Assembly (NCBI GenBank): GCA_977030845.1
Contig: OZ365109.1
Coordinates: 54,498,001 to 54,562,000, forward strand
DNA length: 64,000 nt
From: Fimbriosthenelais zetlandica
Lineage: Eukaryota
Direction: 5' to 3'
The position numbers were made by a program, and so were the translations under genes. The notes below the pieces were generated by a model. The model had not been told where the DNA came from and ran no database searches. It saw nothing but the letters and a program-made list of their open reading frames with translations. This document shows positions 38,352-64,000 of this stretch, piece by piece; the first letter of the stretch is position 1, and each line of letters opens with the position of its first letter.

Positions 38352-39032
38352 ATTATGATATATATACCTTCTACATAATTATATAGACCTAGATGTATGA
38401 TTAGTTTTGCTTTGTCAGGAATTTGAACCCGTCCATGTGCTTGTGATAATGATAAACTATTAAAAATTGAATTTGAAGATTTGAAAATGAAGGTTTCATT
38501 TACTGGGGATTCAGATATGAATTAATTATTAATGATTAGGGCATAGAGCTGTTCTCCCAGAGAGGAACAATTCTGTGATTAGGGCTTACAGTTTGTCAGT
38601 GGGGTGAGTGCGCTGGGCGGGATTTGCAACCTCTGTATGCTTACGCCACCACCGGAAAACTGGAAAACTAATGGCCAAAAGGTTTTTTTTATGAATATAG
38701 TTCTTTGATACTTTCTCCGGGATTGAAGCAGTATTGGTAGAAACATGAAAATAAATCACGAAGATAGTTTTAACGGGTTGAAAAGTTTAACGGCTTTGAG
38801 CAAAATTCTCTGAAGTTACCATGAAGTCCATACCCTCTTGCCGAATTTCCACGAAGTACACAACTACTTCCGGGTGATAATAAGGGTTATCTTCACTTCC
38901 CGAAGCTTGTGGCTTGCACGGTGGAAATACATTTTAATATTTTGTTCATTTCTCTGATGTTAGCCATGGAGATGCTTTCCTGACACATTCGGATGGACCT
39001 GTTAGTAAGTAGAGGTCCCTTTTGACCTGAAA

Positions 39033-42000
39033 ATGGCGTCCCCATTGTCAACAGGACCTATTTTCCAACGATCTTTGGTTCCTGGAACAGGTGGAAAATG
39101 TTGGCGGGCCGAGCGGCTCTTGGGCACCGGGACGTGTTGTACGGTCTGGCGGGCTGAGCTCCACGACAGGCCTGACATACAGGTAGGCCTATGTTTACCA
39201 CATCACTTTGTTATAATGAACTGTCACGGGTGATTTGTGCCATTGGCATTGACAATTCCTTTATAATAGACCTATTAATAAACCTAAAAACACCAAAATG
39301 TGTGCACCTCCACTGGACCACTCCAGTCCAAAGGCTAAGTTATGCTTAATTATTAATGTCTTCTGTCATGGTGTGACCCTTGGGGAAAGTTGGGCTTGGC
39401 CTTCAATACCTTGACTTATCCCTGAATTTTGCCACCTTCCATCATTCTTTATTAACAGGCAGCACTAAAGATCTATAAGTCGGGGAATGCCTACACTGCT
39501 GCTTGTGAACGCGAAATTATGCTGCTGGATATCGTCAAGAATGTCCAAGGAAAATCTAACTTTCTCGGTAATATATATGGTATAATTATTAATTGATTTA
39601 GTGTAAAATAGATCCAGTGTCTTCAACTGCAGTCATGGAAGTCGTGTATGTGACTGTAATTCAAATTTGTGACCCACGATTTAGGAATGACTGAATGTAA
39701 TCAAAGTACTCCACATCCCAGAGAATTTGCTAAAACCTCTTAAACCCGAAGTGATACTATTAGACCTAACAGAGCTTTGAACCTTTTGTGAAAGTAATTA
39801 CAATGATTACCCGGTACCCCGGTACTTTTTTGAATCATTCTCCATTATAGTTTATTATACAATAATAGCCTACTATGATTAGTCTTAATAGAATGCCGGT
39901 AAGTGTCTTTTTTGTTTATTAATCTGAAATATATCTGTCCTTCATTCCTAGTGGAAGTGTTAGACAGTTTTCAGTATAAAGGACACGCATGTGTGGTTGA
40001 AACTTTACTTGAGGCCAGCTTGAGGCACATCATCACTAAAAATCTTCAGCAACCACTCTCTATTGCCCTAATCAAAGTTCTGCTCAAACAACTGCTCAGG
40101 TTGGTATAAATTTGTTCTTTTCCATTATTAGATCGGTACCGGTAATCGATTTGTTTTAAATAAGGACTTTATAATTTGTTTGATTATACATGTAGTACGG
40201 TAGGCCCGGTACCTTACAAAATAGTCAAGCTGAATTTCGTGATCCAAAGCAATTAACATTTTATTAAAAATCCCGTTCCCATTCTGTAGTGGTCTGTCAA
40301 TTCTACACCATTGCGGATTCGTTCACGGAGACTTAAAGCCGTCGAACTTACTGTGGAATCCTCAGGAGGGCAAATTAACGATCATAGATTTCGGTCTCAG
40401 CTTCCATATCAAGGACAAGGTAATGTCACGAGTTGCCATGAATAGGATTAGTGATAGGCCAAATTATCATAACTTCTCTGTGTGGAAATAATGTTTTATC
40501 AATATCATTCATGACCATTATAATATAATTTCTGTACATTTAACAGTTAAAATTATAATATAGGAATAATATTGTTGAAGTTATAAAAAGCTAAACTAAA
40601 CGTGAATAAAATCCATGTCACTGTCCCTCTTGGAAGAGAAATAATCAGAATCTTTAGATAATCTTCCTGAATTGCATATAAAATATGTAGAGTGCTATAA
40701 TATCTCATACAAACAAAATAAACAATGACCGAGCCGTGAGAATTTGAACAAAATTTGCTTCAGCTTGAACTGTACATTATTGCATTGTTTTATTTCCAGA
40801 AAATTGGGCAGGTGCAGACGCCCAATTACCGAGCCCCAGAATGCCATATCTGGAACTCCTACAAACGAGAGCGCCATGCCCCGCAATCAAACCCACCGGG
40901 AGAAACAACTACCGGGAGCCTTACAAATCAGACCTCGATCCAGCCACTACCTCAACAAGCCTTCCCTAGCAGTCCAGGCTCGGCTTTCATAACCCCAACA
41001 GCGGAGTATGTCCCCATCTTAACTCAAACTCCCCTTCCTTCTCACGTTTTTGGGAATGGGAACTTGATACATCCAACCGAAGCCATTCCTCTAAGTGGGG
41101 TACCTGTTGTTGGTTACCAGGAAAGATTGAATACTATGGTTGAAAAGCCCTTGTATTCTCTCGTCTCTAAGTCCACCCCGTCACATGTAGAGAGACCTGG
41201 GCTGCCAGCTGATGTCTGGAGTGTGGGTGTAGTCATTATGGATATGGCCATCGGTGGGAGATTTGTCCCCAGTAAGCACCAAGTCCCTACTCCTGAGATT
41301 CGAGACAGGGTAAGAGATATACTCTTGCAACGAAGAGATGAATGCCAGGATACACTTGAAAGGAAAGAATGGATGTTACTTCTTGACCTGTGCCAAAGGT
41401 ATAACCCAGTTCCCAACTATTTTCTGTTTGGTAGGGGGAAAAATGATTTATCTTGATGGAAACGTCATAGTAACTTTAAGGTTTTGCAACATCGATGATG
41501 ATCGCTCTGTTCAATTTCCCAAACTATGAATAATAGCCAAGTTATGATATGTATTAAACTGTGCCTTCTGTTTCCTAGGATTTTCTTTGATGAGCCTGAA
41601 TACCGTTTGACTACTGAGCAAATGAGTCAACATGAATTTTTCGATATTAGCTTGAGTGAGAATTCTTTACCTTTCCTTGTGACTTTGCCTTTACGCTGGA
41701 AGCTTTGTTTGTGATTGGTATACTAGACTGGACGTGACTGGTGATGTTTTCATGGTATTTCATTTCTGGTTCCATTTCCTTGTTTAGATTTGAGTCATCG
41801 TGACCTCTGGTTGCTACCTACACCTGTGCTGAGATTAGGAAATGTATTTCAGGACAAACCTTATGCTCCAGTGGAGGAACAGGGTATGTAAAAATGGACC
41901 CATAACTTTTCTTATTATAAGGTATCTAAGGTGGCCTTGAAATAATAAAAATAATTATCTAAATCCATATTGATGGCAATGTTAACCGCAGGTATCGTAA

Positions 42001-42423
42001 AGATATATTTCTCATCTTACTTCATTTCACATTGCAGAGATTTTAGACGATGTGCTTGAAGAATGCTTAAGGCATGGACCAATCGAGTCCATCACACTGG
42101 CCAAAGACACACAGAGAAAGGTAATTTGTCGTTACATAGATCGCTAAGTTTTTCTCTGGTGTTGGGTTCCATACTTCTCTTGTATAATATTGAAATTGGG
42201 CGCATTCTCTTTGATAATCTCTCCTGCTGGAGAGCTATAATAATAAGTCTGAAAATTTATTTTGCTACTGATACATTTCTATTTTTAGATTTTCGTAGAG
42301 TATAGGTCGTGGAGATCGGCTGTAGCTTCTTGGGAAGCTGCGTTCAAAATAACTTTTGACGGCCGGAAACTTCAGGCCACTTTCTTCCTAAATGACGATT
42401 TCTACAAAGGAAATCACTATTAG
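39033..42423 (+). CDS. UHMK1: Serine/threonine kinase KIS (kinase + U2AF homology motif), ~508 aa
   Basis: Exons 39033-39182, 39459-39567, 39952-40099, 40290-40419, 40800-41398, 41579-41655, 41788-41883, 42038-42120 and 42289-42423 are in frame. Kinase motifs: ALK, HGDLKPSNLLW, IDFGLSF, QTPNYRAPE and DVWSVG. UHM motifs: DLWLLPTPVLRLGNV, EECLRHGPIES, IFVEY and FDGRKLQATF. Confidence 0.92.
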
Positions 42424-43864
42424 CGTTCGCCATGCAGGAACTGTTAAAGTTTGACGAGCACGCAGAGTTAAAATTTATATTTTTGTTGAAAGCTAGTTGT
42501 ATTTTTTCGTTTGTTGCTTCCAAAAGGTAGATCTGGTTATCGTAATTGAAGCTTTTGAGTAGGAAAGTTTTTTTTACTTTCAAAAACTTATATAGATACC
42601 AGATATTACCCAATGTACCGGTATTAAGAACATGATGAGCCGAAATGAGCCAGAATTATTGTTTTGGGTTACCGTTAATTTTGTTTGTTGCATTTTCTCA
42701 ATAAGGCTCACTGCTAATTGGTCTGTTTCAAGAATTCTTTTGTCTGCCTGACTTGCCTCCTGCTATATAGCTGATTGATAGAACGTAAACTTTAAGGATT
42801 TACAAACCAGTCATATTTTTAATACTTGTAGTTAAAAATACAGTGTGAAACACATCTACCAAATTAAGGCCTTGGATAATTTTGGGTGGTGATATTAAGT
42901 CAATTAATATATAGTTCTAATGTACGTGTCAAAGATGCTTGTTGAAAAATAGGGTCTTCGAAAATTCCAGGATTACTAACTTGCATTTCTGAATTATAAG
43001 AAAGCGGTAGCATATGTTGAACCTTGACAAACTGTATTTATGGTAAATGTGCTTATAAATATTGTATTCCCTGCAGTCATCTGTGATTCACGAAAATGCC
43101 CGGCTTTGATAGATTGCCTCAAACAATGTAAAGTACACGCTAACATTTTGGGGTAAATATTGACCCGATTAGACAGTCTTGATGCTTGGAAATAATTGTT
43201 GTCATCAGACTGTTGCAGGCATGGGCTCCTACTAAAAGTGGAAGAACCAGAACAATGCATTCCGAGTATTTAATCTCAGCCACAGCCCCATACATGTAGA
43301 TATAAACAAGCTTTCATTTCTTGAGTATTTTTCTATTGAAAATAAGACTACCAATATGTTATTTGTATTCAATTTATTGGAGAACTTATCCCTTTGTTAT
43401 TTTCAAAAGGTCATTGTAATATTACTGAAACGAAAAGTTCTTTATGAAAATTAAAACACTAGTAAGCCTACCGTTACTTGAAAAATAGTAGTAGGCCTAC
43501 CTTATCTTTGCTTACCGGTATAGATCTATGATCTTATAACGCATAAAAGTTGTCATTGACGGTTGACTTTTTGCACCTTGTTCCCGCCTTTTTTCCCAAT
43601 GTGTATGTTCAATATCAATAAAATAATAAATAAAAGGGAATGGTGTGAAATTATCTTTTAATGTTTTATTGAACTATATTATGTGTATAGATAGGCCGAA
43701 AACTGCAGAAATGCTATCGCTTCTGAGTCTGGGAAACAGATCTGCCACCTGGTGGTTTCCCGCTGAAGTAAAGCAAAGACATAAAGTCGCGACGATGCAC
43801 CGCCTAGTGAGGCTAGGGCGAACCGTGCAGGGGAATTCTAAGCCTCGTTTTGGATTCACCTATT

Positions 43865-43870
43865 TATAAA
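43865..43870 (+). promoter_or_regulatory. Candidate TATA box upstream of GTF2B
   Basis: TATAAA lies ~38 nt upstream of the ATG at 43908. Confidence 0.4.
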
Positions 43871-43907
43871 CGGGAGGGTCTTTCCCAATCTCATTTCAAC
43901 TTGCACA

Positions 43908-46900
43908 ATGGCGGCCAGAAGGTAGGTTGTATATTTGCTTCTGAATTATTTCTCGAAGAAAAAGGTTCACATCGCTCTATGAGTTACCAAATTGCTGATT
44001 GTGTTTATTTACCGATCAGTCATCCCTAGAAATACCAAATTATGTTGTGGCTCAGCCTCAGTGCGGGGCTGAGAGCTGAGTCAATGAGACTATGTCTATG
44101 ACTATAAGTATAATGAGTGTAGCCTGCTGCAGTGTAGAACTAGAAGTGTAGGCTGTACTACTGAGTACTGTAGAGTGTGTAGTGTGGACTTGTGAGTTTG
44201 TGTATTGATTAATTATCATTATGTGACTCCTCTGTGACTGTATGGTAAGTTTAAGAAGATATGATTGCCTATGCTGTTGTCTCTTGAAATACACTGCAGT
44301 CCCTTTCCGGATCCGATATAGTCAACGATAGTCCGATATTACTCGGCAACCTGAGTTAATGAGTAGGCTGTATTTTAATCAACTAAAAATATTTTCTTTT
44401 TGTTTATCAGAGGAGCAGGTGTTTCATGTCCATCTCACCCCGATACACCTTTGGTGGAGGACTACCACGCTGGTGACATGGTCTGTCCTGAGTGTGGCCT
44501 TGTAGTTGGTGACAGGTGCGTGTAAAATAATACAGTACATCGGGTATCAATGTCTACCTAGTTAGAACTGAGTAGAAAAGTACTGTCATAAAGAAAAGTA
44601 CTCACTGCAGTATTTTAGTGAAAAAAAATAAAATATTCACAATCTCAAATTTATTGAAAATTCATTAATTAATTAGCCTCATTTCGTAAACATATATCTA
44701 GACTAATAAACTAAAAACAGAGACCTAGGTGGAAAAAATGTAAATTTATATGTGACATTTTGCTGCTATGTTCTAGTTTTACAGTAGGCCGAGACCTACA
44801 TATCCTTGTCACAGGTGGTTTTTATGTTGTGGAAACTGACGTATCGGATTTCATTTCAGAGTTATAGACGTGGGGTCGGAATGGAGAACCTTTAGTAATG
44901 ATAAAAATGCCAAGGACATGTCTCGTGTTGGATCATCAGAGGTAGGTCTTTGAAAATATTTTATTTCTTTATTTCACACTCAGTTTATTCTACAGGGTCC
45001 ACGTTATGACGGAAAAAATAATTAATCTCCCCATCTTTTCAGAATCCATTGTTGGAAGGAAGTGATCTGTCTACAGTGATAGGGGCTGCTACAGGTTCCG
45101 CCAGCTTTGATGATAGTGGAAAACCTATGTACAGGAACCGGCGACAGGTAAATGAAATTACTGGGTTTTTTTTTTAATAATTATGGTTTCAAAACCTTGA
45201 ATGAATGCAGTTCCTAAAATGTTATTCATGCATTTCATACACTTTCTATGTAGCCTATCGATTTTCACCACTTTTCCTATAAATGTATGTCATAATTGAA
45301 AATTAAACGTAATGTAGATTAATTCTTGGAATAATTATAAACAAACAAGTTTAAAAGTTGGGAACAATTTACTAGCAATCATTAATTGTTTTCTTCTCTT
45401 CTAAAGATGAACAGTTCCGACCGATCCTTACTCACTGCATTCCGCGAGATCGCCCAGATGGCTGATCGTCTAAATCTACCGAGAATGATTGTCGTAAGTT
45501 TAAAAAGATTTTATTATGCTTTTGAATATTATATGCAGGTGGGTTGGATTTAAATGGGAGTGGCCCCGAGTTGAATTCTCGTATATCCTCCGAATTTATC
45601 AAAGCCATTCCCCATAAAATGTTAAATTTTTCTGGTGAGATGCATGAGCACTGCTAGGCAAGAAGAGCAGGACATAAGACCCCACAGCTCAATACCAATA
45701 GACAAATATTTATATTTTTATTTCTCTTTATTTTCTATAGGACCGAGCAAATACGTTATTCAAACAAGTACACGAAGGTAAAAATCTGAAGGGACGAAGT
45801 AATGATGCCATTGCTTCAGCGTGTCTCTACATCGCCTGCAGACAAGAAGGTGTTCCTCGAACGCTAAAAGGTTAGTTTTATTGACAATTCTGATTTCAGA
45901 TTGGGTATGAAGTTATTAACATTTATATAAATTCCAGTAAGGTGGAAGTAAGTGTAAGCGTATGTAACTTTGGATTTTATTGCATCCAACCCCTCAATTT
46001 ACTTATAAAAAACTGAAAATGAGGAAAGGTTATGCCGAAGGGAACTTAACTAAGAAATGTGTATCCTTTTCTTCATGATAGAGATCTGTGCTGTGTCCAA
46101 AGTATCTAAGAAGGAGATAGGTCGTGTTTTCAAACTGATTCTGAAGACACTGGAAACGAGCGTGGAACTGATCACGACAGGCGACTTCATGGTGAGTGGT
46201 AGAAAATAATCACTTATGAAATAGTTGATAAAACACAAATGTATGTCATTAAATCGGAAATGCGAAAGTATATTAAGGTGGATCGGTTAGAATGAATTAG
46301 ATTTGGTTGAATGTTAGGTTAACTCATTCTTTATATTTTTTGTGAATATTGCATGCACTATTTTATCTCTATTTTCCAGTCCCGTTTCTGTTCTAACCTG
46401 GGCTTGCCGAACTCAGTACAGAAGGCTGCTACACATATAGCTCGGAAGGCGGTGGAGATGGATCTAGTCGCAGGGTAAAATTCACTTAGAAAATTATTTA
46501 TAAAAAAAAAAATGAATTTAAAAATATTAGAATATTATGTAGGTTGATAGTAGGCCTAAGTAATATTGTTCTATTATTCACTTTTTAAACCCTACTATTT
46601 TTCAGACGAAGCCCGGTATCTGTGGCTGCAGCTGCAATCTACATGGCATCACAAGCTTCAGAGGACAAAAAATCACAAAAAGGTGATTATTATGTTCTCT
46701 ATAGTTAATTTTAATCAGATATATAGTTTTGCAACGTAAGGAGAATAGATATTCCAGTTATAGAAAGTAACTCTTTTCCTCAATCCCAGAATATAATGGT
46801 GATTTTCTTCTATTAATTCTATTTCATAAATCAAATTTATACATGTATATAGGGGAAAAAATTCAGAGATAAACTAAATACCGTATCTAATTTCCTATGT

Positions 46901-47127
46901 ATTTTTTCCCACCTGGTTACAAACTTTGGGGGAATGAGCCACGCATAACCACCGAATTTCCCATATGAACTAATGACTTTATTGTCCTTGTAGATATTGG
47001 AGATATTGCAGGCGTGGCAGAAGTCACCATCCGACAGTCGTATAAATTGATGTACCCCAAAGCTCATGCGTTATTCCCGGAAGATTTCAAATTCTTTACA
47101 TCCATTGAACATTTACCCACGCAATAA
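43908..47127 (+). CDS. GTF2B: General transcription factor IIB (~312 aa)
   Basis: Ten exons (43908-43921, 44411-44515, 44860-44941, 45043-45147, 45407-45493, 45741-45870, 46082-46191, 46380-46474, 46606-46682, 46994-47127; 939 nt). Zinc ribbon [19 protein letters not shown]-reader [14 protein letters not shown], and cyclin folds [18 protein letters not shown] and [19 protein letters not shown]. Confidence 0.98.
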
Positions 47128-47981
47128 TAATTGACATTAAGATCAACGATATTATGATAATTTTTGAGGGACAGTTGAACCCAGTTTCATACCTCTTGAT
47201 GTGGAAATTATTGAATACCCGTACTTTTTCTTTTAATATTAAATATCTGTTTACGTAAAATTTACCTCCTAATAATTATGTGGATAGAAGTTGTCCAAGT
47301 TGTGTATACTCCAGCTAGGGTTCCCACAGTCATTGGAATGGTGAAATAATGAATAAACTTAAAAGGCGGCTCCCCAAGTTAATAGTTGCCAGGCATTGAC
47401 TCACATCGTGCATTCTTTTTTCTACATTTGTTTAAATCACTTATGCCGAGGCCTGCGTTTTCCGTTTTAAAATTGTGCTTAGATACCGGTACATGTATTA
47501 GTAATAGGACTACTGCAATGATATTAGGCTTAATTATTTCAGTATAATTATATACATTATTCATTAATTATATTTCCATGTGTTAAACCCTATTACTTAG
47601 CTACCCAATTGTATAATTTCATGACCATGTGCATTATAAAAAGGCGAGATATTGCTTATCGCATAATTTTGTTCAATGTTGGGGAAGTAGACATAATGGT
47701 TAAGTAACAAGTTGAATATTATATAACAGCAGAGCTCTAGCAGACGATATATGTTTTTTGACCAAATAAAAATAAGATTAAATGCTATTTCTGCTCCTTT
47801 CTTCATGATATCATATACCGGGTACCGGTATATATTTTAAGACTCTAGAGTCGACTGTCACGCTTCACTGAAAAGGCCTTTAGCATTGGGCCTCGTTTTG
47901 AGCGACATGATGTAAGATGCAGATAGCAAGGAAGGAGAGGTGGAGGGCGGGGCGTGATTAGTCTTGAGTCTAATCTGATGA

Positions 47982-51809: not shown

Positions 51810-54800
51810 ATGGCAGGTGACTTTGGTAACTTTGGCCAAGGGTTGGGAAACCTATTTGGATCCATGGTTGGTGGAATGGCCCAGGGACTTGCCACAGCTG
51901 GTAAGTATAATTTGAGCCAAGAATCGTATAGAATTAATAATCAGTATGAGAAGCCGGTATCTGACACGTAGGCTATATGCAAATTCTGAAAGGGTGCAAA
52001 CTCCAATCATACATCCCTATAGAAAAAAGACTGGGGTGCTATGGGGTTTCAATGATTGAAACAATAAGTATATTAGTACCGGGTATATGATATAAATTTA
52101 CTACACAAGTTGGTGTTTTTAATCTCAGGGAGATATTTTAATAAAGTTATAGCCAAACTGTCCTTTCTGATCGATTTCATAACTTTTATACCGGTATGTA
52201 TTAACAATGGTCTGACTCTGACACTGTCTGTAGGTGGTGCAGATGCGCAAAATCCGCTAGCGCAGCTCTTTTCACAAGCCAATGCCCAAGGTAGGCCTAA
52301 TAGTCCCATGAATTATTTGATCAGAAATTCATTTAGTGAAAAGAATTTTTTTCTCTGGACTGCATATTACATATTAGATATTGTATAGGCTACATGTATA
52401 TAATTAATTCCTGATCTTAACTTTTCATTTTCATTTTCTTGGCTGCAGGTTTGAATCAACCATTGTCTAAAGTCGATGTCCCTGCTAAGTCTGGTAAAAT
52501 TCTATACATGCATTGTTATAAATATAAATTATTTATTAATTGTTGTGGCTTATTTTACAAAAAAATAGTTTTTCATCAATTCGTATAAAATAATTGCAAT
52601 TCTACATAATATTACTTCAGAGACCCAAGAGCGGAGAAAGGATTTCAAACCTGAAGGTAAATTATATCTCTTTAGCAGGCTAAATAAATGTATCACATTT
52701 CATAGCTCAATACTACTGTATCTTTTCAAATTGTGAAGAGCTATCATGGCGTTACTGTAATCATAATATAAATGATTTTTACTGATTATTTTCTGCTCTC
52801 TAGAGATCCTTGATGCCGCGAAGTTGAATCGCAGCGCGGTGGCGAAATTTGATTGTTATTCCGAAGAATGCTTGGTGAGAAAATTCTGATATTTTTCTTT
52901 ATTACTGATTGTAAAAATTAATAATAAATTAATGACATCACACTTAATTGGGAACTTACGTTAATCGCCGAAGAAAGTATTTCTGGAACGGGTATTTGAC
53001 ATGTGTTTATTTATTCAAAATACCTTCTTTCACCAGATCTTAGACGAAGGGAAAATGTCGGTGGCAAAGATATCTTTCCGTGGAGATGGAAATGTGAGCG
53101 ACAACTTCATTAGAATATGGAGGACCAGTGCGTTATTGGTGAGCAGTAATATTCTACTACGTCTCTATGTCTCTTTTTTCCTACTCTTTTTTTAAAAAGA
53201 TTTTGCAGGGATACAACGTTCGAAGCAGTTGTCTGATGTCAGGCTTTTTGAAATTTCAGGACTTGTTGATTTTAACCCTCTTTCAAATTAAAGGGCATTC
53301 TCCATAGCTAGGGCTCCAAATCTTTTTCAAAACTCATAAATATTTATAAATCATGACTTGTGTTACCTCGCTAGGATTTTTCCAATACGGAAGTGGTGGA
53401 CTTAAGTGGATGTGTTAACTTGACTGATAAAGGTATAGAATGGCTGGCTGAGCTACTAGATGCCTCCTCCTCCCTCTACAAGGTAAGCTAGACTCCTGAA
53501 TGAGATATTACCAAGTTAAAAATCTGTATGATACAGTGAAATCTCTCCTATGGAAAGCCGCAATGATCGATATTCACACTTTGCGACCATTGGATTATTT
53601 GAACCAATGTTTTAAAAAAACATTAAGATGTACCAGCACACGTACTCAAATATCTCCTTACACCACAGTAAAATCCTGGACATAATTGCATTAATTAGTA
53701 ACTTTATATAAATGAGATGTTGGTTCTTTAGATCTCCATTGATGGCTGTGTAAAGGTGAGCCAGCATGGTGTCTCCATACTACAGTCACTGAGATTAGAT
53801 CCAGAAGTGTCCTACCATGGTACAGCAGCTAGCATACTCTCACAAGGCATGGATAAACACGAACAAATTACAAAATCACATGGACGTGCAACAATCAAAG
53901 GTTGAGATGCAAAATCAATCCATTTTTCATGTTTCATAAATTATAAATACAGTGGACACTAGTTCTGAACCATAAATTATGTGTCTTGAAACATAGAACC
54001 ATACAAATTAATAAATTTATGTAACGTGAAAGGGGGGAAGGTTCAGACTAGGTATGACGCATCGTGTAATGCAGCGTTACGTGATTTTACTCGCTTAAGC
54101 CTCCCATAAGATCCTTTAATTAAGCCTCCCATAATCATTCAATGGTCGCAGTAGTGGGCCCTAACAGTAATATGAGGGTAAACTACCGTCCTGTCTTGAT
54201 AGTATTTTATTATTGTTTTCAGATAATAACAGAATCCATGTAAGTAAGGTTCTTGTCCATCAACCACCTCAGCCCAAGTACAAACTGACTTCATTCTTGA
54301 TGGACAAACAGATGGAGCCTGCCGAGGACCTGACTTTTACACCTGAGTGGAACCTTGCTGGTACTCACTTCACTATCAGTGAATCAGTCATAAATAACGT
54401 GAGTTCATAATGTATTCCGCCTCCCTCTCCTCTGATCATCGATTTATCCCTCCCTCCCTCCCTCCCTTCTTACATGTCCTGTATTCCGTGGTTAATGAAT
54501 TCTTTTCTTCTTTCTTATTCCAATCCCCTTACCATCGTTTTTCTTCATTTTTGATTGTATTATGTTTCCTGGGTGTCATCTAAATTCTGCTTTCTTTCCA
54601 TAGCCTTTGAACAGCGCCCTCCAAAACACCATGGGGTCCCATGTTGTGATACCAGTAGACTTGGATGGTGACAAGGACAAAGAAATCGACCATATTATGA
54701 ATACCATAGAGTATAACACCAGCAAGGTTAGATCTGTTAAGATATCTTCATTTAGCATTGATTTCCTTTTGTAGTTTTTGTATGACCCGGGCTCGGTTTG

Positions 54801-57800
54801 TACCGACAACCTTCCAGACACGGGGCAGACACTGTAACCACTTCACCGCCGTGGTTGTGCTGTTTTCCTTTTGCTGATAGCAATATTATACCAGTAACTG
54901 GCCGTTTCCTTTATTTACTATCATACATTTTCAGGGAATGCCCACCTCAGAACTTGGGTCAAACTTGGACAAGTTGATCTACCCACTCAAGGTCTTGAAC
55001 GGTCTATGGGAAGAGCATACAGGGCGGATAACGTGAGGAAATTGAATTTCTCTTCCTTGAATTTAAAAAAAAAATGTTGATTTTATTAACAGACAGTATA
55101 TTAGTCTTATTATATTGTATGTTAAGCTCTTTTTAATTTTGTTATACCAGGTTTGTCAATCATATAGTGGCCCTGCAAAAAGGCATAGAGCAGATGGGAG
55201 CTCTTGTAGGTGAAAGAAACCTGATCAATGAGGAAGATAGCTACGACCTGACTGCGATACTGCTATCATGGGTTCCCACCAAGACAAGACCCCACCTGGA
55301 GTTTCTTGTTGAGGAAACTTCTAGCAAACAAAAAGTGCCGGTCTCGTTTGCCTTTGGAAATGCTGATTTGGAATCGAGCCGAGTCGTTTCTATGTACGTA
55401 CATGTATACTAATATTCTCAATGTTTTTGGAAATATTTTTTTCAAAATTATCATTTTTCAAATTACAAATTTCATCCATATATATTGCATGCATGTGTCC
55501 TATAAATTATTATCATTCAGGTCGGTAGAAGCATCAAAAGGCGACGTCCTGCGGATTGGCCTTGAGGACCCTGGGTCTATGGACCATATGCATGTCTTGG
55601 ACAATTGTGAGGAAGTCTCTTTGTGGATCAATGGTGAAAAAGTGAGTATACATCGTTTACCCTAATACAGTCTTTAGAAGAGTGATACTAAAATACATGT
55701 ATTACCTTGTTCATATGGTGGATAAAAAGAAAATTAGCAGGGTCAAAATGTATTATATGATTTACTCTTTTTTATTATCATTTGCGACGGCGAATCAGGA
55801 ACTTCTGCTCCTTTTAAAATATTCAAATTTTCAAATAATTTATTTAGTTCGACTCCGCTGTTGCCATGACCTTAGATTGTGTATTCTATGTTTTGATCTA
55901 GGTTGATACTGGCACTGTCTCTGGTAATGACACCGGTCTACATGTCAATGCTGTTAGTGACGTCATCAGCCTGCGTCTACTCGATCATTATCCTCTCTCA
56001 GTATGTGCATTCCATTCCAACCAAATATGCTTTTAATCACTAACTACATCTTTTTATTATTTTTATAAAAAAGATGAATATAACAAAGATGTTAAATATG
56101 CTTCTTCAGGGTTCCAGGGGAAATAGTGAAAAAATGTTCCTTCTTTCCAGTCAGTGAGAAATCAATTAATAAATTTCAGTAAAAGATATTTTATTTCAAA
56201 TTCCCTAATACACGTACTGATGATACTGGAACAAAATTCTGTCAAGTTGTTACATATTGTTTATAATGATATGTCTCTTTTTTTCTGTACAGAAACATGT
56301 TGCGAGGGGTAAATGCATGCCTACTATTGAGATTGCCGCGGATGTAGGTATATTCGATGAGCCAAGCGGAACAATAATGTTAGTTAAAGAAATATATTGA
56401 ATCTCATTGAAGAGTGTTGGTGCCAGTTTTTCCCGGTTTCTGGATTTATCAATAATTCTATTGGTGATATTTTATTTTTCAGAAGTGAAGAACATTCTGT
56501 TCTAGGTATATTCTTTCAACCCATCAGTCGAGATTTCCACGTGCTTGAGTACCAGATCCTCAGCGAGAGTTCAGACGACGTTGAAGATTTTTCCTGCGGC
56601 TTGGTAAATGAAGTAGATCTGGACGAAGTGTCGGGCAATATCAAAGATCCTACCAAATTTGCATTCTTCCCATTAATCGCAAAGTGAGTCCATTTTTGCC
56701 TGCTCACTGATTGCTAATCCTGTTTTCTTTTTCTGACGGGAATTTGTAGAGATGGTCAATAAATTGGTTGAAAATTTAAGAGAATTGGTGGTAATTTAAG
56801 AGAATTATGAGCATAAATTAAGTTGAAGTTAATGCGATTTCTTAAGGTATGCTCTTTGATTTTTCCAGAATCACCGGTCAGGATTTTACCACCCATTCTG
56901 AGCCCACCTGTAAACAATGGGACCGAGTAAAAATCATCGTCCATGTTGGCTCTGATCTGATGATAATGCATCAAAAGAAGTACAAAATCGAAGTCTTCAA
57001 AAACGACAACTTGGTATGCCTAATTTTACTTTAAATCTCGTATAGAGTTACTCAAACGGAATATAAGTAACTGCATTGGCTTGTTTTACCTATTGGGAGA
57101 CTGACATGACTAGACAAATGATTACGCGCAATGTGAAAAAAATCTTTTCTTTTACTCTACCATTTTTAAAGATAGTATCTGGCTCCTGTGAACGAAACCT
57201 TAATACGAATGACCTAGAAGAAGATTTGGGACTGCATGCTCCATATTTCTACATTGAGATTCCGGGCCATACTAAGATTCAGTTGCTGAATATGGGGCCC
57301 TCGCCAGGCTATATCCAAAAGGTAAGTAAGTTTAGCATCTCTTTATACATTGTACTTAACTATTTACTTCAAAGTGAGTGGATAAATTATGTATGAGCAT
57401 TTTTTTTATTGCAGTCACATGTATCGTCAGTCTTGCCCAATACCTGCTTTCTGCGCCCACTTGGTGAATGTCGGGAACTTCAGAGCAGTGAAAATGTTAT
57501 CTGGTAAACCATGTTTCTTATGTACCTGTATAAAAACTCACATGCATCAACTCCTGTACATAACAAAAACAAATTAAAAAGTGCAAATTTATGCGTCTGG
57601 GTTATGGAACCTTGAACTAAATGGAACCCCAATTCAGCTCCTGTTCAGGTCATATGTGATCCTTGTATTTAAACCCAAAAATATTCTTGCATTTAACCTA
57701 AAACGTCTGTCTTAATATCGTTTCACAGGCTAAGGGATGGTGATCCATTCATTGGAGAAGCATCATTGTCAGTCATACACCCTAGTGTTACGTTTTCCAT

Positions 57801-60449
57801 CATATCGTTCACGAAGGATGCCAACCTCTCTTTTGGTCTTTCACCGTCAAATTTTGGTGGTGATTATGAACAAATGTAAGTGAATATGAAATTTTGCTTC
57901 TCAGTGAACACGAAATTCTGTCAATCCTGTCCCAGGACAGTTTTCTCTGATAATGGCGTGCCTTGTGTCAGACCTATGGCTTGTTTCTTTTTCTGTGAAG
58001 TGTAACCGAATTCAAGGAAGGCGATTCATTTGAGTGTATTTTGGACACCAGTGGTCTGAAATGTGATTGGTATGGCGTCCCTGTTCTCGATCAAGATATT
58101 AAAGTCATCTTCAAACAAAACAATGAAGTGGTAAGTATCGCTTAAGCATGTACCAGTTCACATGAAACGAGTGTCCTATTCCGCCCCCACTATTCTTCAT
58201 CATTCTTTGCGGAAAATACGGCCCCATCAGTTCTTACATGGATTTCAGACTTTAGCCAATTGTTACAGATTTCTAGGGGTTGTGCACTAGATATATAACG
58301 ATGTGGACCAGCGTTCTCCACCAAGTGATGGAGACAGATAACAGAATCATGGTTGGACGAAAGGGGTAAATTCTTTCTGATTTTTGACAGGTGAATGAGT
58401 GTTTGGACTACTACAAGGGTGGCGGTCTGTCACCGTACATAAGGGGCTGTAACATGGAATTACGTCTACATGAAATGAACACAGATGAAGCTCAAAGAAT
58501 TCTCTCGCAGGTAATGCCATTCTTCACCAAGTAAATATCAAGTAAATCGTAGCTATAAACTTTAATCCAATGGCCGCGATGTTTTTTTTTAAATCACGCC
58601 AGGAAGCGACGTTTTATGCGTTGCTGACAAATCAGAGGTCAAAAATCCCTTCTTGCTAGGTCTGCTTTGTACAAATGCTTAGCGCAAACGTCTAACAAGT
58701 CTCGTATAAGTTGTTTAAAACATGGTGCTCTCCATGATATTCTTATTCCGGGGAAAATCGTCAAATTTAGCATTTGAGTAATCTTTACGTCTGAATTTTT
58801 TGTTTCTGAGAAATCAGGTATTTAAGATCAGAACTACCTCGGGAAATAACTTACCTGGTGTATCATATCCTTTTAACCATTTCCTTCTTCAGTCCATTTC
58901 CACAAAGAAAAGGTACATTGTGGCTGGCATGACTACCAGTAAGAAAAAGAAGGACTGTAAGAAGATTCTACAGGAGGTGAAGACAGATCTAATATCCCGC
59001 CTAGAGAACCACCTGGAGGAGTCCAAAGCCATCATAGATGATGCTCAAACCCATGTGGAGAAGAGGTGGGTTCTTCATATTGAAATATTTATATTTTCAC
59101 TCTGTTCGACACAAAACGATCCAGTAGTTTTAAAAGGTTATTGTTATACTCTTCACACTTATATTTCTGATACATGTAAACCCTTTTTGGTTTGGAATAG
59201 GACAACAGCAACCAAATGAGCCATGTGGCCCATTGCACAACTGTCGCCCGGCCATTGAAATTACAAAGCTGACAGTTGAATCTCTAATTAATTAGGATAT
59301 CTGTACATATTTGGATTCTTCTATAATTATTAAGCTTTTCCGGAGGTGTTGTAGCAGCCCAGCTTGAGGTTTACCGACGAAATCTGCAGCTGTTAGTGAC
59401 GAACCTCCCCTCATCATGGGCCTTCATTCCCATCAACCTAACCACAAATGAGGTAAGTTATCTGCCCTTAAATTGGTCAAGATTTCCTATATCTTCTACT
59501 TTTCTACTTATTTTTTTTACGTATAAAATCAAAATTGTAAATCTTGGATTGATTTGAAAATAGGTGAAAGGCGACTTTGTAAGCTCTTTCTAACTGTAAG
59601 TCTCTCTGTCTGCCTCTCTAATTGTCTGTCTGCCTGTCTCTTTCTCATCATCTCTGACCTCTCCCTCATAATCTCTATCTACCTCTGTCAGACATCTCTG
59701 TGCCTCCCTCTGCATCTTTCCCTCTCCCCTCTATCTGCCTCTCGAACATCTGTGCCTCTGTCTACCTCTCCCCTCTCTCTCCCTCTGTCTTTCGTTCCCC
59801 ATGCACGATCTCAAAGAAAAGATGTACTGTGATAATCACTGCATTAATATTGCTATGAGGTAATCTAAAATAGACTTACTCCTCTGTCATTTAGGGACAC
59901 GGTAAGCTCTGCTCCACGCTACATCTCAACCAGAATCAAAGTCTGGCCTTCGGAGACGGTTCTGGCTCCTCTCAACTTGTCTCTGATATCTTGAAGAAAC
60001 TCCAGGAAAAGGAAAGCAAAGAAAAGTTACCTAAAATACTCTCCAGATCCAATTACCGCGATTTCCTGGACGTCAATGAAGGTCAACTTGCTGCTGCTCT
60101 CAAGCTCATTTCCTACTGGGTAAATAGTCACTTTTGGTTAGAATGCATTTGAAGAATACAATATCCGAAATATTTGGGACGAGAGAAAGGCGATAGGCTT
60201 AGACTTTTCCCTGTGGACAATTGAAAATTGTATTTTATTTGGCAGGGGCTGGTCTTATTTGTGCCAGACATGGACCCGTGGGTTGCCATATTAGATGTGC
60301 CTTGGTTCGTCAACATGCTGAAAAAGCTGGAGAAAGTTCCCGACTCCCGAGCAGGACTCAATGTGAGGGGACTGGCGCCTGACACTCCCGTGTGGTCGGA
60401 CAAAGAACTGGGAAAATTATGTGCTGAAAATTCCATGGAACAGACCAAG
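51810..60449 (+). CDS. Large ROCO-like protein: Cys-type LRRs, degenerate Roc-like GTPase fold interrupted by SPRY-like modules, start of a COR-like domain (5' partial, 1091 aa seen; continues beyond the last exon found)
   Basis: 26 exons splice in frame (3273 nt, no stop). LRR: EVVDLSGCVNLTDKGIEWLAE and KISIDGCVKVSQHGV. Roc-like: KVLVH..., EWNLAGTHF, HVVIPVDL, RYIVAGMT and FIPINLTTNEGHGKL. COR-like: LAAALKLISYWGLVLFV and VAILDVPWFVNMLKKL. The gene model is solid; the domain identity rests on by-eye similarity. Confidence 0.65.
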
Positions 60450-60509
60450 GTAGGAGTACTGTCATACCTTACTACTGGAGAGCCTCACATAGTACCTAAT
60501 TACATTGTT

Positions 60510-61331
60510 TTTGTATGACAGACTGGCAACAGAGAGGTTATTGGGTTTTTAATAAATTTTATTAAATGAATAAAGATTGATAAGGTAGCACCAGTGGCAA
60601 CTACCCTAAATGTATGAGAATGGAGTTTTAAACATATTTGTGAAACGTAAGTTTAACATAGTTTGGAAAATGAAATCGAACAATAAAGGTAAGTTTTAAA
60701 GTTACACATCGAGATGTAAAACGTTTAACATGAAATGTTATAGAATTGACCTTACAGTGGTAGAGCTATATGGGATGACCTGGAAAAGGCGAGGAGGATG
60801 CGAGATGGGAAGATTAGGAAGAGGAGAAAAGAAAATGGGGAGGGTTGGGTGGGAAAGAAAATTGATGTGTGTCGGAGCCTGAGCGAGATAGGTGTTGACC
60901 CTGTGGTGGTCAGTTGTGAAAGAGGTGGAGTATAGAGGTGCTCTCTAGGAGGAACCGGAAGAGGAGGTACCGGAAGGAGAGGATGGGAAAGGCAAAGATG
61001 ATGGTTGCGTCTTCATACAAATTTCATCTCGCGGGCTAGAGATGAGAGCTTTGTATGACAGACTGGCAACAGAGAGGTTATTGGGTTTTTAATAAATTTT
61101 ATTAAATGAATAAAGATTGATAAGGTAGCACCAGTGGCAACTACCCTAAATGTATGAGAATGGAGTTTTAAACATATTTGTGAAACGTAAGTTTAACATA
61201 GTTTGGAAAATGAAATCGAACAATAAAGGTAAGTTTTAAAGTTACACATCGAGATGTAAAACGTTTAACATGAAATGTTATAGAATTGACCTTACAGTGG
61301 TAGAGCTATATGGGATGACCTGGAAAAGGCG
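60510..61331. repeat. Apparently identical ~282-bp direct repeats (60510-60791 and 61050-61331) around a purine-rich ~260-bp spacer
   Basis: TTGTATGACAGACTGGCAACAGAGAGG...GACCTGGAAAAGGCG occurs twice with a 540-bp offset. Confidence 0.95.
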
Positions 61332-61385
61332 CCATAACGAGGCCCTGTTAACAGGACGAGTGTCAGCCCATAGAGAGAAAACACA

Positions 61386-63460
61386 GGCCTAGTCAGCACA
61401 CGCTGATCCTAGGTGATGAGATTGTCACAGATTATATGAACACTGATGTGGGAGGCCTAGTCAGCACACGCTGATCCTAGGTGATGAGATTGTCACAGAT
61501 TATATGAACACTGATGTGGGAGGCCTAGTCAGCACACGCTGATCCTAGGTGATGAGATTGTCACAGATTTATATGAGCACTGATGTGGGAAGCCTAGTCA
61601 GCACACGCTGATCCTAGGTGATGAGATTGTCACTGATATATATGAGCACTGATGTGGGAGGCCTAGTCAGCACACGCTGATGCTAGGTGAAGAGATTGTC
61701 ACAGATTTATATGAGCACTGATGTGGGAAGCCTAGTCAGCACACGCTGATCCTAGGTGATGAGATTGTCACAGATTTATATGAGCACTGATGTGGGAAGC
61801 CTAGTCAGCACACGCTGATCCTAGGTGATGAGATTGTCACAGATTTATATGAACAGTGATGTGGGAAGCCTAATCAGCACACGCTGATCCTAGGTGATGA
61901 GATTGTCACAGATTTATATGAGCACTGATGTGGGAAGCCTAGTCAGCACACGCTGATACTAGGTGATGAGATTGTCATTGATATATATGAGCACTGATGT
62001 GGGAGGCCTAGTCAGCAGACGCTGATCCTAGGTGAAGAGATTGTCACAGATTATATGAACAGTGATGTGGGAAGCCTAGTCAGCACACGCTGATCCTAGG
62101 TGATGAGATTGTCACTGATATATATGAGCACTGATGTGGGAGGCCTAGTCAGCACACGCTGATCCTAGGTGATGAGATTGTCACAGATTATATGAACACT
62201 GATGTGGGAGGCCTATTCAGCACACGCTGATCCTAGGTGATGAGATTGTCACTGATATATATGAGCACTGATGTGGGAAGCCTAGTCAGCACCCGCTGGT
62301 CGTAGGTGATGAGATTGTCACTGATATATATGAACACTGATGTGGGAAGCCTAGTCAGCACACGCTGATCCTAGGTGATGAGATTGTCACTGATATATAT
62401 GAGCACTGATGTGGGAGGCCTAGTCAGCACCCACTGGTCGTAGGTGATGAGATTGTCACTGATATATATGAGCACTGATGTGGGAAGCCTAGTCAGCACA
62501 CGCTGATCCTAGGTGATGAGATTGTCACTGATATATATGAGCACTGATGTGGGAAGCCTAGTCAGCACACGCTGATCCTAGGTGAAGAGATTGTCACTGA
62601 TATATATGAGCACTGATGTGGGAAGCCTAGTCAGCACACGCTGATCCTAGGTGATTAGATTGTCACTGATATATATATGAGCACTGATGTGGGAGGCCTA
62701 GTCAGCACACGCTGATCCTAGGTGAAGAGATTGTCACTGATATATATGAGCACTGATGTGGGAAGCCTAGTCAGCACCCGCTGGTCGTAGGTGATGAGAT
62801 TGTCACTGATATATATGAGCACTGATGTGGGAGGCGCTGATCCTAGGTGAAGAGATTGTCACAGATTATATGAGCACTGATGTGGGAAGCCTAGTCAGCA
62901 CCCGCTGGTCGTAGGTGATGAGATTATCACTGATATATATGAGCACTGATGTGGGAAGCCTAGTCAGCACACGCTGATCCTAGGTGATGACATTGTCACT
63001 GATATATATATGAGCACTGATGTGGGAGGCCTAGTCAGCACACGCTGATCCTAGGTGATGAGATTGTCACTGATATATATGAACACTGATGTGGGAGGCG
63101 CTGATCCTAGGTGAAGAGATTGTCACAGATTATATGAGCACTGATGTGGGAAGCCTAGTCAGCACACGCTGATCCTAGGTGATGAGATTGTCACTGATAT
63201 ATATGAGCACTGATGTGGGAAGCCTAGTCAGCACCCGCTGGTCGTAGGTGATGAGATTGTCACTGATATATATGAGCACTGATGTGGGAAGCCTAGTCAG
63301 CACACGCTGATCCTAGGTGATGAGATTGACATTGTTTTATATGCACACTGATGTGGGAGGCCTAGTCAGCACCCGCTGATCCTAGGTGATGAGATTGTCA
63401 TTGTTTTATATGAACACTGATGTAGAAGGCCTAGTCAGCACACGCTGATCCTAGGTGATG
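61386..63460. repeat. ~62-66-bp minisatellite, roughly 33 copies
   Basis: Unit GGCCTAGTCAGCACACGCTGATCCTAGGTGATGAGATTGTCACTGATATATATGAGCACTGATGTGGGA, with recurrent variants (ATAT number, CCGCTGGTCGTAGG, and a 14-bp deletion form). Confidence 0.98.
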
Positions 63461-63547
63461 ATAGTGTTATGAATTTTTTGCACAGATTTTTTGATGAGTA
63501 TGGTCATTGTTGATTCGTTGTCGGATTGCAAGCAGAAAACAATAGAA

Positions 63548-64000
63548 ATCGAAGCATTGTGGATATATTGGATAGAAAGGGATTATGACACTGCGAGCAG
63601 AGTACCTTTCGTATAGATGTAAGTGAATTATTCAGACCTGGAGAGGGATTATGACACTGCAAGCAGAGAACCTTCCAATAGTTATCGAAGCATTGTGGAT
63701 ATATTGGATAGAAAGGGATTATGACACTGCGAGCAGAGTACCTTTCGAATAAATGTAAGTGAATTATTTAGACCTGGAGAGGGATTATGACACTGCAAGC
63801 AGAGAACCTTCCAATAGTTAATCGAAGCATTGTGGATATATTGGATAGAAAGGGATTATGACACTGCGAGCAGAGTACCTTTCGTATAGATGTAAGTGAA
63901 TTATTCAGACCTGGAGAGGGATTATGACACTGCAAGCAGAGAACCTTCCAATAGTTAATCGAAGCATTGTGGATATATTGTATAGAAAGGGATTATGACA
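63548..64000. repeat. 136-137-bp satellite running off the right edge
   Basis: ATCGAAGCATTGTGGATATATTG starts at 63548, 63684, 63821 and 63958. Each unit holds two AGGGATTATGACACTGCRAGCAGAG subunits. Confidence 0.95.

What the first reader, a model, noticed from the sequence alone, without database searches (positions are those of the whole stretch)
54223..60449. ROCO-like protein whose Roc fold is split by about three SPRY-like modules and lacks a P-loop
Seen: after two Cys-type LRRs comes KVLVHQPPQPKYKLTSFL (P-loop position, but no GxxxxGKS/T), then EWNLAGTHF (cf. Roc WDFAGQ) and HVVIPVDL..EIDHIMNTI. Twelve exons (54935-58510, 525 aa) follow, carrying three repeats of a SPRY-like pattern: GDVLRIGLE..LWINGEKV..GLHVNAV; FQPISRDFHVLEYQI..FSCGLV..WDRVKIIV..EVFKNDNL; and VTFSII..LSFGLS..GDSFECILD..IFKQNNEVV..LSPYI. 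The Roc-like strands then resume (RYIVAGMT, FIPINLTTNEGHGKL), followed by COR-like ALKLISYWGLVLF..ILDVPWFVNML. Established: ROCO proteins (LRRK, MFHAS1, DAPK) have a contiguous Roc-COR, and SPRY domains are ligand/protein-recognition modules common in innate immunity. Inference: a nucleotide-dead ROCO scaffold with a recognition cassette inserted in the G domain, a candidate invertebrate immune sensor or adaptor.
Basis: partly seen in the sequence, partly recalled or inferred. Interest (0 to 1): 0.8.

Follow-up and report, generated by a model that had tools for sequence, protein, structure and literature searches.

The report
Split ROCO-like pseudo-GTPase, triple insert
An intact, conserved but unannotated animal gene looks like a LRRK-type (ROCO) scaffold whose GTPase domain has lost its nucleotide motifs and is split by three copies of a 160-190-residue module, but neither fold could be tested here.

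Summary
A GT-AG chain of 24 exons on the + strand (ATG at 51810, open to the donor at 60450) gives 1055 codons without a stop. It reads: Gly-rich N-terminus, four Cys-type LRR-like repeats, a Roc-like half without a P-loop, a 543-aa insert of 12 exons, a second Roc-like half, then a COR-A-like stretch.

The insert is real coding sequence. A distant relative's contig carries exons E8-E13 and A-D in the same order with the same intron phases; spliced modules score z=13 and z=28.

The insert is three copies of one four-exon unit. All three share intron phases 0|2|2|0|0. M1 resembles M2 (z=4.7 and 2.4). A third-exon profile from M2+M3 ranks M1's exon first of 914.

No LRR, Roc, COR or SPRY call passed a statistical test. 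Single exons and exon profiles hit nothing meaningful in Pfam, the PDB or the ESM Atlas. The spliced protein has no reference, so it could not be folded or scanned.

Verdict: real gene, real triplicated insert. ROCO descent is likely (about 0.65), a SPRY/B30.2 fold is plausible (about 0.45), and an immune role is speculation.

The parts
51810..52290 (+). Exons 1-2 (51810-51900, 52234-52290): start codon in an ATCATGG context and a Gly/Ala/Gln-rich N-terminus, aa 1-49.
   Evidence: Three-frame reading and phase-matched GT-AG junctions.
52804..53819 (+). Four exons (52804-52874, 53037-53138, 53375-53482, 53732-53819), each encoding one Cys-containing LRR-like repeat, e.g. VDLSGCVNLTDKGIEWL and ISIDGCVKVSQHGVSIL; aa 50-172.
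   Evidence: Reading and splice phases. No Pfam LRR hit on single exons, so this is a pattern-level call.
54223..54726 (+). E1 and E2 (54223-54398, 54604-54726): the N-terminal 'Roc-like' half, aa 173-272. Proposed elements are strand 1 without a P-loop, WNLAG at the G3 position, strand HVVIPVDL and helix EIDHIMNTI.
   Evidence: No Pfam hit. Not found in the relatives' contigs.
54935..56000 (+). Module M1, 187 aa: exons 54935-55032, 55151-55393, 55521-55641, 55902-56000. Intron phases 0|2|2|0|0.
   Evidence: Resembles M2 in exon 1 (z=4.7) and exon 2 (z=2.4). Its third exon ranks 1 of 914 with a profile built from M2+M3.
56293..57321 (+). Module M2, 194 aa: exons 56293-56378, 56483-56683, 56869-57013, 57172-57321. 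Same phases 0|2|2|0|0.
   Evidence: Orthologous exons with the same phases sit in the distant relative L005; the spliced comparison gives z=13.
57415..58510 (+). Module M3, 162 aa: exons 57415-57503, 57729-57875, 58001-58130, 58391-58510. Same phases 0|2|2|0|0.
   Evidence: Orthologous exons are in L005, two with identical lengths (130 and 120 nt); the spliced comparison gives z=28.
58893..59452 (+). Exons A and B (58893-59065, 59335-59452): the C-terminal 'Roc-like' half. It holds strand RYIVAGMT (G4 lost), long helices, and strand FIPINL that continues as TTNEGHGKL across the B/C junction.
   Evidence: Orthologues are in L001 (40-44% identity) and L005. The VG[MT] remnant is conserved; the G4 Asp is absent in all three species.
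59895..60449 (+). Exons C and D (59895-60119, 60246-60449): end of the Roc-like part and a COR-A-like stretch (ALKLISYW|GLVLF..ILDVPWFVNML). The reading frame stays open at the donor at 60450.
   Evidence: Exon D found five single-exon relatives among 1.84 billion representatives, best 66% identity. The exon D profile has no PDB hit. An AlphaFold2 model of exon D with its 6-sequence alignment reached only pLDDT 62.
60450..64000 (+). Intron after exon D, expanded by a 69-bp satellite (61387-63461), a 137-bp tandem array (63540 to the window end) and a duplicated element of about 150 bp. The next exons lie beyond the window.
   Evidence: The downstream exons of the closer relative (L001) find no match in the window.

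Best explanation
This is an intact, conserved, lineage-restricted gene for a ROCO-derived pseudo-GTPase scaffold. The order of parts is a short Gly-rich N-terminus, four Cys-type LRRs, a Roc-like domain, and a COR-like region that continues past the window. The Roc-like domain has lost the P-loop, the G3 aspartate and the G4 guanine-specificity motif, so it most likely cannot bind or hydrolyse GTP. It is split, between the predicted helix 3 and strand 5, by a 543-aa cassette. The cassette consists of three tandem copies of one four-exon unit of about 160-190 residues. Each unit starts and ends in intron phase 0, so it can be inserted, duplicated or skipped without a frameshift. The modules are poor in helix-forming stretches and carry colinear motifs that recall PRY-SPRY/B30.2 domains: an MPT-like start, a short hydrophobic FG-type strand (SFAFG, KFAFF, LSFGL), K.GD..r, v.f.kN.e.v, and GL.P....L.l. 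My inferred mechanism is as follows. The LRRs and the three modules are binding surfaces. The dead Roc-COR core serves as a dimerising structural frame rather than a nucleotide switch. Shown here: the gene model, conservation, loss of motifs, the insertion site relative to those motifs, and triplication of a unit. Inferred: the Roc and COR folds, the SPRY-like fold, and any binding or immune role.
For: The 24-exon GT-AG chain gives 1055 codons with no stop and a start codon. Exons A-D, plus three further downstream exons, recur in L001 at 37-62% identity. In a second species, exons E8-E13 and A-D recur in the same order with the same intron phases; three of these exons have identical lengths, and the spliced modules score z=13 and z=28. 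The three modules share the phase pattern 0|2|2|0|0. Using typical intron-phase frequencies (from my knowledge), my estimate of that arising by chance is about 1e-4. M1 resembles M2 in corresponding exons, z=4.7 and 2.4. A leave-one-out third-exon profile ranks M1 first of 914. Third and fourth exons align with invariant D, G, N and G residues. The G1, G3 and G4 positions are read directly, and the G4 Asp is also missing in both relatives. The downstream exons of the relatives continue a COR-like pattern. This last point compares them with LRRK2 COR as I remember it, so it is only a lead. Helix-prone windows number 2-4 per 100 aa in the modules against 9-15 in the flanks (a crude measure).
Against: No statistical test links any part to LRR, Roc, COR, SPRY, PRY or NHR. 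Pfam on exons returned nothing relevant. PDB searches with exon profiles returned nothing relevant. The ESM Atlas returned nothing above noise. Whole-module Smith-Waterman and hhalign comparisons are not significant, and M3 has no sequence-level link to M1 or M2 beyond the third exon. The stretch between the P-loop position and WNLAG is only about 20 aa, too short for a full helix 1, switch I and strand 2. AlphaFold2 on the largest insert exon alone gave pLDDT 54 and a 20-residue helix, which is uninformative. M1 and the N-terminal Roc-like half were not found in the second species within 12 kb upstream. There is no transcript evidence: no sequencing run was listed.
Confidence: 0.5

Rival explanations
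1. The flanks are not Roc-COR. The protein belongs to a lineage-specific family (LRR-like repeats, triplicated module, helical region) whose resemblance to ROCO is a coincidence of short motifs.
For: No Pfam, PDB or Atlas support for Roc or COR on any exon or exon profile. Exon D has only five relatives among 1.84 billion representatives, and none is an annotated ROCO protein. All diagnostic G motifs are absent.
Against: At least seven motif positions fall in the right order and spacing over about 450 aa outside the insert: strand 1, G3, strand 4/helix 3, strand 5, strand 6/G5, the COR-A hairpin-helix, and COR-like continuation in the relatives. LRRs lie directly upstream, as in ROCO proteins. 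Exons are too short for Pfam models, so the negative searches carry little weight.
Confidence: 0.3
2. The flanks are ROCO-like, but the three modules have another fold: a different beta-sandwich such as a lectin, MATH or Ig-like domain, or a mixed alpha/beta fold, rather than SPRY/B30.2/NHR.
For: No SPRY, PRY or NHR hit for any insert exon or for profiles of corresponding exons. AlphaFold2 of exon 55151-55393 predicts a 20-residue N-terminal helix, at low confidence.
Against: Module length (162-194 aa) and the order of motifs fit PRY-SPRY (pattern-level only). Helix-prone windows are rare in the modules.
Confidence: 0.4
3. The cassette is optional. Because exons E2 and A, and every module, begin and end in phase 0, the main transcript may skip some or all of the 12 exons and encode a contiguous Roc-like domain, with module inclusion regulated.
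For: Phase-0 symmetry of the whole cassette and of each module. The second species shows only two modules in the region searched.
Against: All 12 exons keep strong splice sites and an open frame. M2 and M3 are conserved across species as well as the flanks are, so they are translated in at least one isoform. No RNA data are available either way.
Confidence: 0.15
4. The locus is a decaying pseudogene, or a chance chain of open exons.
For: No transcript evidence. The 3' end lies outside the window, behind satellite arrays.
Against: 1055 codons without a stop across 23 canonical introns. Exon boundaries and phases are conserved in other species.
Confidence: 0.03

Closest known systems
ROCO proteins (LRRK1/2, MFHAS1/MASL1, DAPK1, bacterial and Dictyostelium Roco): LRR-Roc-COR
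   Same: LRRs lie directly before a Ras-like module that is followed by a COR-like region. A VGT/VGM remnant sits where LRRK-type Roc has VGTHxD. There is a hairpin-helix motif like COR-A. These comparisons are at pattern level. ROCO reviews: PMC6337361, PMC6320773.
   Different: There is no P-loop, no G3 Asp and no G4 motif. The domain is interrupted by 543 aa. No kinase, death or TIR domain is seen next to COR in the relatives. No Pfam Roc or COR match was obtained.
DDX1, a DEAD-box helicase with a SPRY domain inserted in its first RecA-like domain (PMC4555926)
   Same: It is a precedent for a SPRY-type interaction platform grafted into the core of a P-loop NTPase fold.
   Different: DDX1 has one SPRY domain, keeps its nucleotide motifs, and is a helicase rather than a Ras-like GTPase. 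Here there are three modules in a motif-dead domain, and their SPRY fold is unproven.
SPRY/B30.2-bearing immune proteins (TRIMs, pyrin, some NACHT NLRs) and LRR-fused AP-GTPase/COR conflict systems (PMC8195603)
   Same: A candidate recognition module (SPRY-like, LRR) is combined with an NTPase-type scaffold.
   Different: In those proteins SPRY is terminal, not embedded in the NTPase. PMC8195603 lists SPRY partners (RING, HECT, NACHT, Death-like) but no ROCO partner. No immune evidence exists for this gene.
Pseudo-GTPases: Ras-fold domains that have lost nucleotide motifs and act as scaffolds
   Same: G1, G3 and G4 are lost, yet the protein is conserved. This comparison rests on my knowledge of the class.
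   Different: I know of no described pseudo-GTPase that is a ROCO-type Roc with an internal multi-domain insert, and my literature searches found none.

Membership tests
ROCO (Roc-COR tandem) | Roc G domain with G1 GxxxxGK[ST], G3 DxxG and G4 [NT]KxD or THxD | tested here: not met
   Direct reading gives VHQPPQPKYKLTS, WNLAG and VAGMTTSK. The relatives read VVGMTEKK and VVGTSQKT.
ROCO (Roc-COR tandem) | Profile match to Pfam Roc/Ras and COR models | tested here: inconclusive
   Only single exons of 23-138 aa could be scanned, and none matched. The spliced product has no reference and could not be scanned.
ROCO (Roc-COR tandem) | Ras-like fold immediately followed by the COR fold | not testable with these tools
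Exon D alone gave pLDDT 62.
ROCO (Roc-COR tandem) | Colinear secondary-structure and motif order (strand 1 to G5, then the COR-A hairpin-helix), with LRRs upstream | tested here: met
   Met by reading only. This is a pattern-level comparison with consensus recalled from memory, not a statistic.
SPRY / B30.2 / NHR | Profile match to Pfam SPRY, PRY or Neuralized models, or to solved SPRY chains | tested here: inconclusive
   No hit for insert exons or for profiles of corresponding exons against the PDB. The pieces are only 30-80 aa long.
SPRY / B30.2 / NHR | Bent beta-sandwich fold of about 120-200 aa | not testable with these tools
   Each module is split over four exons. Exon 55151-55393 alone gave pLDDT 54. 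Module lengths of 162-194 aa are compatible.
Tandem domain repeat (three copies of one unit) | Shared exon structure and detectable similarity between copies | tested here: met
   All three modules, and the relative's M2 and M3, have identical phases 0|2|2|0|0. M1 against M2 gives z=4.7 and 2.4. The third-exon profile ranks M1 first of 914. Whole-module hhalign is not significant.
Cys-containing (RNI/FBXL-type) LRR | Repeats of about 24-28 aa with an LxxLxLxxCxxItDxG pattern, or a Pfam LRR match | tested here: inconclusive
   The pattern is seen in four consecutive exons. Single exons gave no Pfam LRR hit.

The most novel reading that the evidence does not exclude
A new class of ROCO-derived receptor, in which ligand binding by three B30.2-like modules grafted into a nucleotide-dead Roc domain replaces GTP as the trigger of the Roc-COR conformational and dimerisation switch. 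This would form an LRR-plus-SPRY dual-sensor scaffold restricted to one invertebrate lineage.
Probability: 0.1. Interest if true: 0.8.

Novelty: new variant of a known kind. Interest (0 to 1): 0.5.

Why it matters
If the fold assignments hold, this is a natural experiment on the Roc-COR core that underlies LRRK2. It would show that the core can survive loss of every nucleotide motif. It would also show that the core tolerates a 540-residue insert between helix 3 and strand 5 while staying conserved across species. That would mark a permissive site and a GTP-independent, purely structural use of Roc-COR. It would also add a domain combination (ROCO with SPRY-like modules) that surveys of SPRY and AP-GTPase architectures do not list (PMC8195603). 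Separately, the clean 0|2|2|0|0 four-exon unit repeated three times is a textbook case of domain amplification by exon duplication. If the assignments fail, what remains is an ordinary lineage-specific orphan gene with an internal triplication.

Tried and rejected
- RNA evidence: two run searches listed nothing, so read laying was never used.
- Search for a full-length relative: exon D against 1.84 billion representatives gave only five single-exon fragments. The largest insert exon found nothing in the word-indexed search.
- Pfam on 30 exon or open-stretch pieces from the window and the relatives gave only sub-threshold chance hits such as DUF4982, PTS_EIIA and SAP.
- PDB sequence and profile searches (exon D family; second, third and fourth module exons; the relative's Cys-rich exon) gave nothing meaningful.
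- Three ESM Atlas searches all scored below 0.85.
- AlphaFold2 on exon 55151-55393 alone gave pLDDT 54, and on exon D with a 6-sequence alignment pLDDT 62. Both are too poor for a fold search, so I ran none.
- Whole-module Smith-Waterman and hhalign comparisons were not significant.
- The search for M1 and the N-terminal Roc-like half in the second species (12 kb upstream, tblastn and exon HMMs) found nothing.
- Rfam and tRNA scans of 51-64 kb were empty.
- The literature gave nothing for ROCO+SPRY, or for the relatives' accession numbers.
- Step left out: handing the spliced 1055-aa product, or a spliced module, to Pfam, structure or Foldseek tools. It has no reference, and typing long sequences is barred.
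- Considered and rejected: that RYIVAGMT is strand 1 plus P-loop of a Roc domain starting after the insert. Only about 125 aa, with two strands, lie between it and the COR-like part, too little for a whole G domain.
Full report
**What is there**

The window is AT-rich animal DNA with short exons. I printed the + strand in three frames from 51.6 to 60.6 kb. Reading these, I could chain 24 exons through canonical AG/GT sites so that the frame is kept at every junction.

- The chain starts at an ATG in a good context (51810).
- It encodes 1055 residues without a stop.
- It is still open at the donor after 60449.

Three corrections apply: the insert is 543 aa rather than 525, the product inside the window is 1055 aa rather than 1091, and there are four LRR-like exons rather than two.

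The minus strand has only short ORFs, typical of the antisense of coding exons. There are no Rfam or tRNA matches. The intron after the last exon is filled with a 69-bp satellite and a 137-bp array. The relatives' downstream exons find no match in the rest of the window, so the 3' end of the gene lies outside it.

**Is it a real gene?**

No sequencing run was listed for this stretch, so there is no transcript evidence. Conservation answers the question instead.

Exon D (60246-60449), searched against 1.84 billion representative proteins, found only five hits. All are 65-104 aa single-exon fragments from unannotated assemblies, the best 66% identical.

- **L001.** The contig behind the best hit (3.5 kb) carries exons A, B, C and D in order at 37-62% identity, plus three further exons downstream.
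- **Second species.** The contig behind a 39% hit is a 2-Mb scaffold of a second species. I fetched 34 kb of it in three overlapping loci (L004-L006). It carries, in the same order, exons matching E8, E9, E10, E11, E12, E13, A, B, C and D, then the same three downstream exons.
- **Shared structure.** Their splice boundaries fall at the same codon positions with the same phases. Three exons have identical lengths: 201, 130 and 120 nt.
- **Spliced comparison.** The second species' M2 and M3 modules align to the window's with z=13 and z=28 against shuffles.

The insert is therefore translated sequence of the same gene and is older than the split of these species. A pseudogene or a chance chain is excluded for practical purposes.

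**The insert is a triplicated four-exon unit**

Each third of the insert has four exons. In all three the intron phases read 0|2|2|0|0, counting the boundaries. The second species' M2 and M3 show the same pattern.

Outside the modules, only one of the gene's 12 other introns is phase 2. With typical phase frequencies (from my knowledge), my estimate of two further modules repeating that pattern by chance is about 1e-4.

The sequence signal is weak but present:

- Whole-module Smith-Waterman and hhalign comparisons are not significant.
- Corresponding exons of M1 and M2 score z=4.7 and z=2.4.
- A profile of the third exons of M2 and M3 from both species ranks M1's third exon first among 914 background open stretches, E=0.08.
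- Third exons align on K.GD..r...G...v.f.kN.e, and fourth exons on GL.P....L.l.

Because the cassette and each module are bounded by phase-0 introns, any of them could be skipped without a frameshift. Whether that happens is unknown. No further module copy was found within 12 kb upstream in the second species. M1 may therefore be a later duplicate, too diverged to detect, or further away.

**What the flanks look like**

Read without the insert, the sequence follows the order of a Ras-like domain:

1. A strand (KVLVHQ).
2. A helix-like stretch (KLTSFLMDK).
3. WNLAG where ROCO proteins have WDFAGQ.
4. A strand and helix (HVVIPVDL, EIDHIMNTI).
5. The insert.
6. A strand (RYIVAGMT) where LRRK-type Roc has VGTHxD.
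7. Long helices.
8. A strand and turn (FIPINLTTNEGHGKL) like the G5 region.
9. A stretch (ALKLISYW|GLVLF..ILDVPWFVNML) that follows the helix-hairpin-helix pattern of COR-A.

The relatives' next exons continue with patterns that recall the end of COR-A and COR-B. Four Cys-containing LRR-like repeats sit 15 residues upstream.

The nucleotide motifs are gone. There is no GxxxxGK[ST], the G3 Asp is Asn, and there is no [NT]KxD. The last of these is missing in all three species.

I considered whether RYIVAGMT could instead be strand 1 of a Roc domain that starts after the insert. Only about 125 aa, with two strands, lie between it and the COR-like part, so a split domain fits better.

**What could not be shown**

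None of these domain names passed a statistical test here.

- Pfam scans of 30 exon-sized pieces from the window and the relatives found nothing relevant.
- PDB searches with the exon D family profile, and with profiles of corresponding module exons, found nothing relevant.
- ESM Atlas look-ups stayed in the noise.
- AlphaFold2 on the largest insert exon alone gave pLDDT 54. On exon D with its small alignment it gave pLDDT 62. Both were too poor to search with.

The decisive step is folding or profile-scanning the spliced product. It could not be run, because the product has no reference in the tools and long sequences may not be typed.

A crude propensity count shows few helix-prone windows in the modules (2-4 per 100 aa) against 9-15 in the flanks. 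That fits beta-rich modules in an alpha/beta frame, but it is weak evidence. The Roc-COR and SPRY/B30.2 readings thus rest on colinear motifs compared with consensus from my own knowledge. I put them at about 0.65 and 0.45.

**Function**

I commit to the following reading. This is a ROCO-derived pseudo-GTPase in which the Roc-COR core is a structural, probably dimerising, frame. The LRRs and the three inserted modules are the binding surfaces.

The immune-sensor idea is only an analogy, to SPRY in TRIMs and NLRs and to LRR-AP-GTPase-COR conflict systems (PMC8195603). Nothing here supports it specifically. The insert exons are no less conserved than the flanks.

In the second species the exon after the COR-like part is a phase-compatible Cys/His-rich exon of unknown type, not a kinase, death or TIR domain.

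**Comparison and novelty**

The closest known kind is the LRR-Roc-COR family. The closest precedent for the graft is DDX1, whose SPRY domain sits inside a RecA-like P-loop domain (PMC4555926). I found no paper describing a ROCO protein with SPRY-like modules or with an interrupted Roc domain.

The scan's earlier notes mention other Roco genes in this genome. I did not examine them, and exon D did not find them.

I rate this a new variant of a known kind, conditional on the fold test. Interest is moderate. The gene and its triplicated insert are solid and unusual, but the two claims that would make it striking remain untested.

Noticed in passing
window 60450-64000: The intron after exon D holds a 69-bp satellite (61387-63461, about 30 copies), a 137-bp tandem array (63540 to the window end), and an element of about 150 bp that occurs twice (60700-60880, 61240-61390).
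   Followed up: partly
window 59553-59860: A CT-rich low-complexity stretch fills most of the intron between exons B and C.
   Followed up: no
L007 1-3141 (NCBI GCA_022702835.1, JAKGBL010067876.1): A short contig joins bacterial pilus-assembly genes (Pfam SAF/RcpC and Secretin) to an exon-D-like ORF, with a drop in GC from about 50% to about 35%. It looks like a chimeric assembly of host and bacterial DNA.
   Followed up: partly
L005 about 10100-10890: In the second species, the 3' end of the E13-like exon together with its donor site is amplified as a minisatellite. The ORFs read AYHDITGRVSLTECIIG many times, which gives many tandem copies of a splice donor.
   Followed up: no
L004 16771-16986: A phase-compatible Cys/His-rich exon (72 aa, about 17 Cys/His) follows the COR-like exons in the second species. 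It has no meaningful Pfam, PDB or Atlas match. It may be the family's C-terminal module.
   Followed up: partly
window 34700-47150, + strand: Three other genes lie upstream on the same strand: a TPR-repeat protein (about 34.7-37.5 kb), a protein kinase with a 238-aa exon (about 39-42 kb), and TFIIB (about 44.4-47.1 kb).
   Followed up: no
window 54727-58892: Exon E2 ends and exon A begins in phase 0, as does each module. Skipping the whole cassette or any single module would keep the reading frame.
   Followed up: partly
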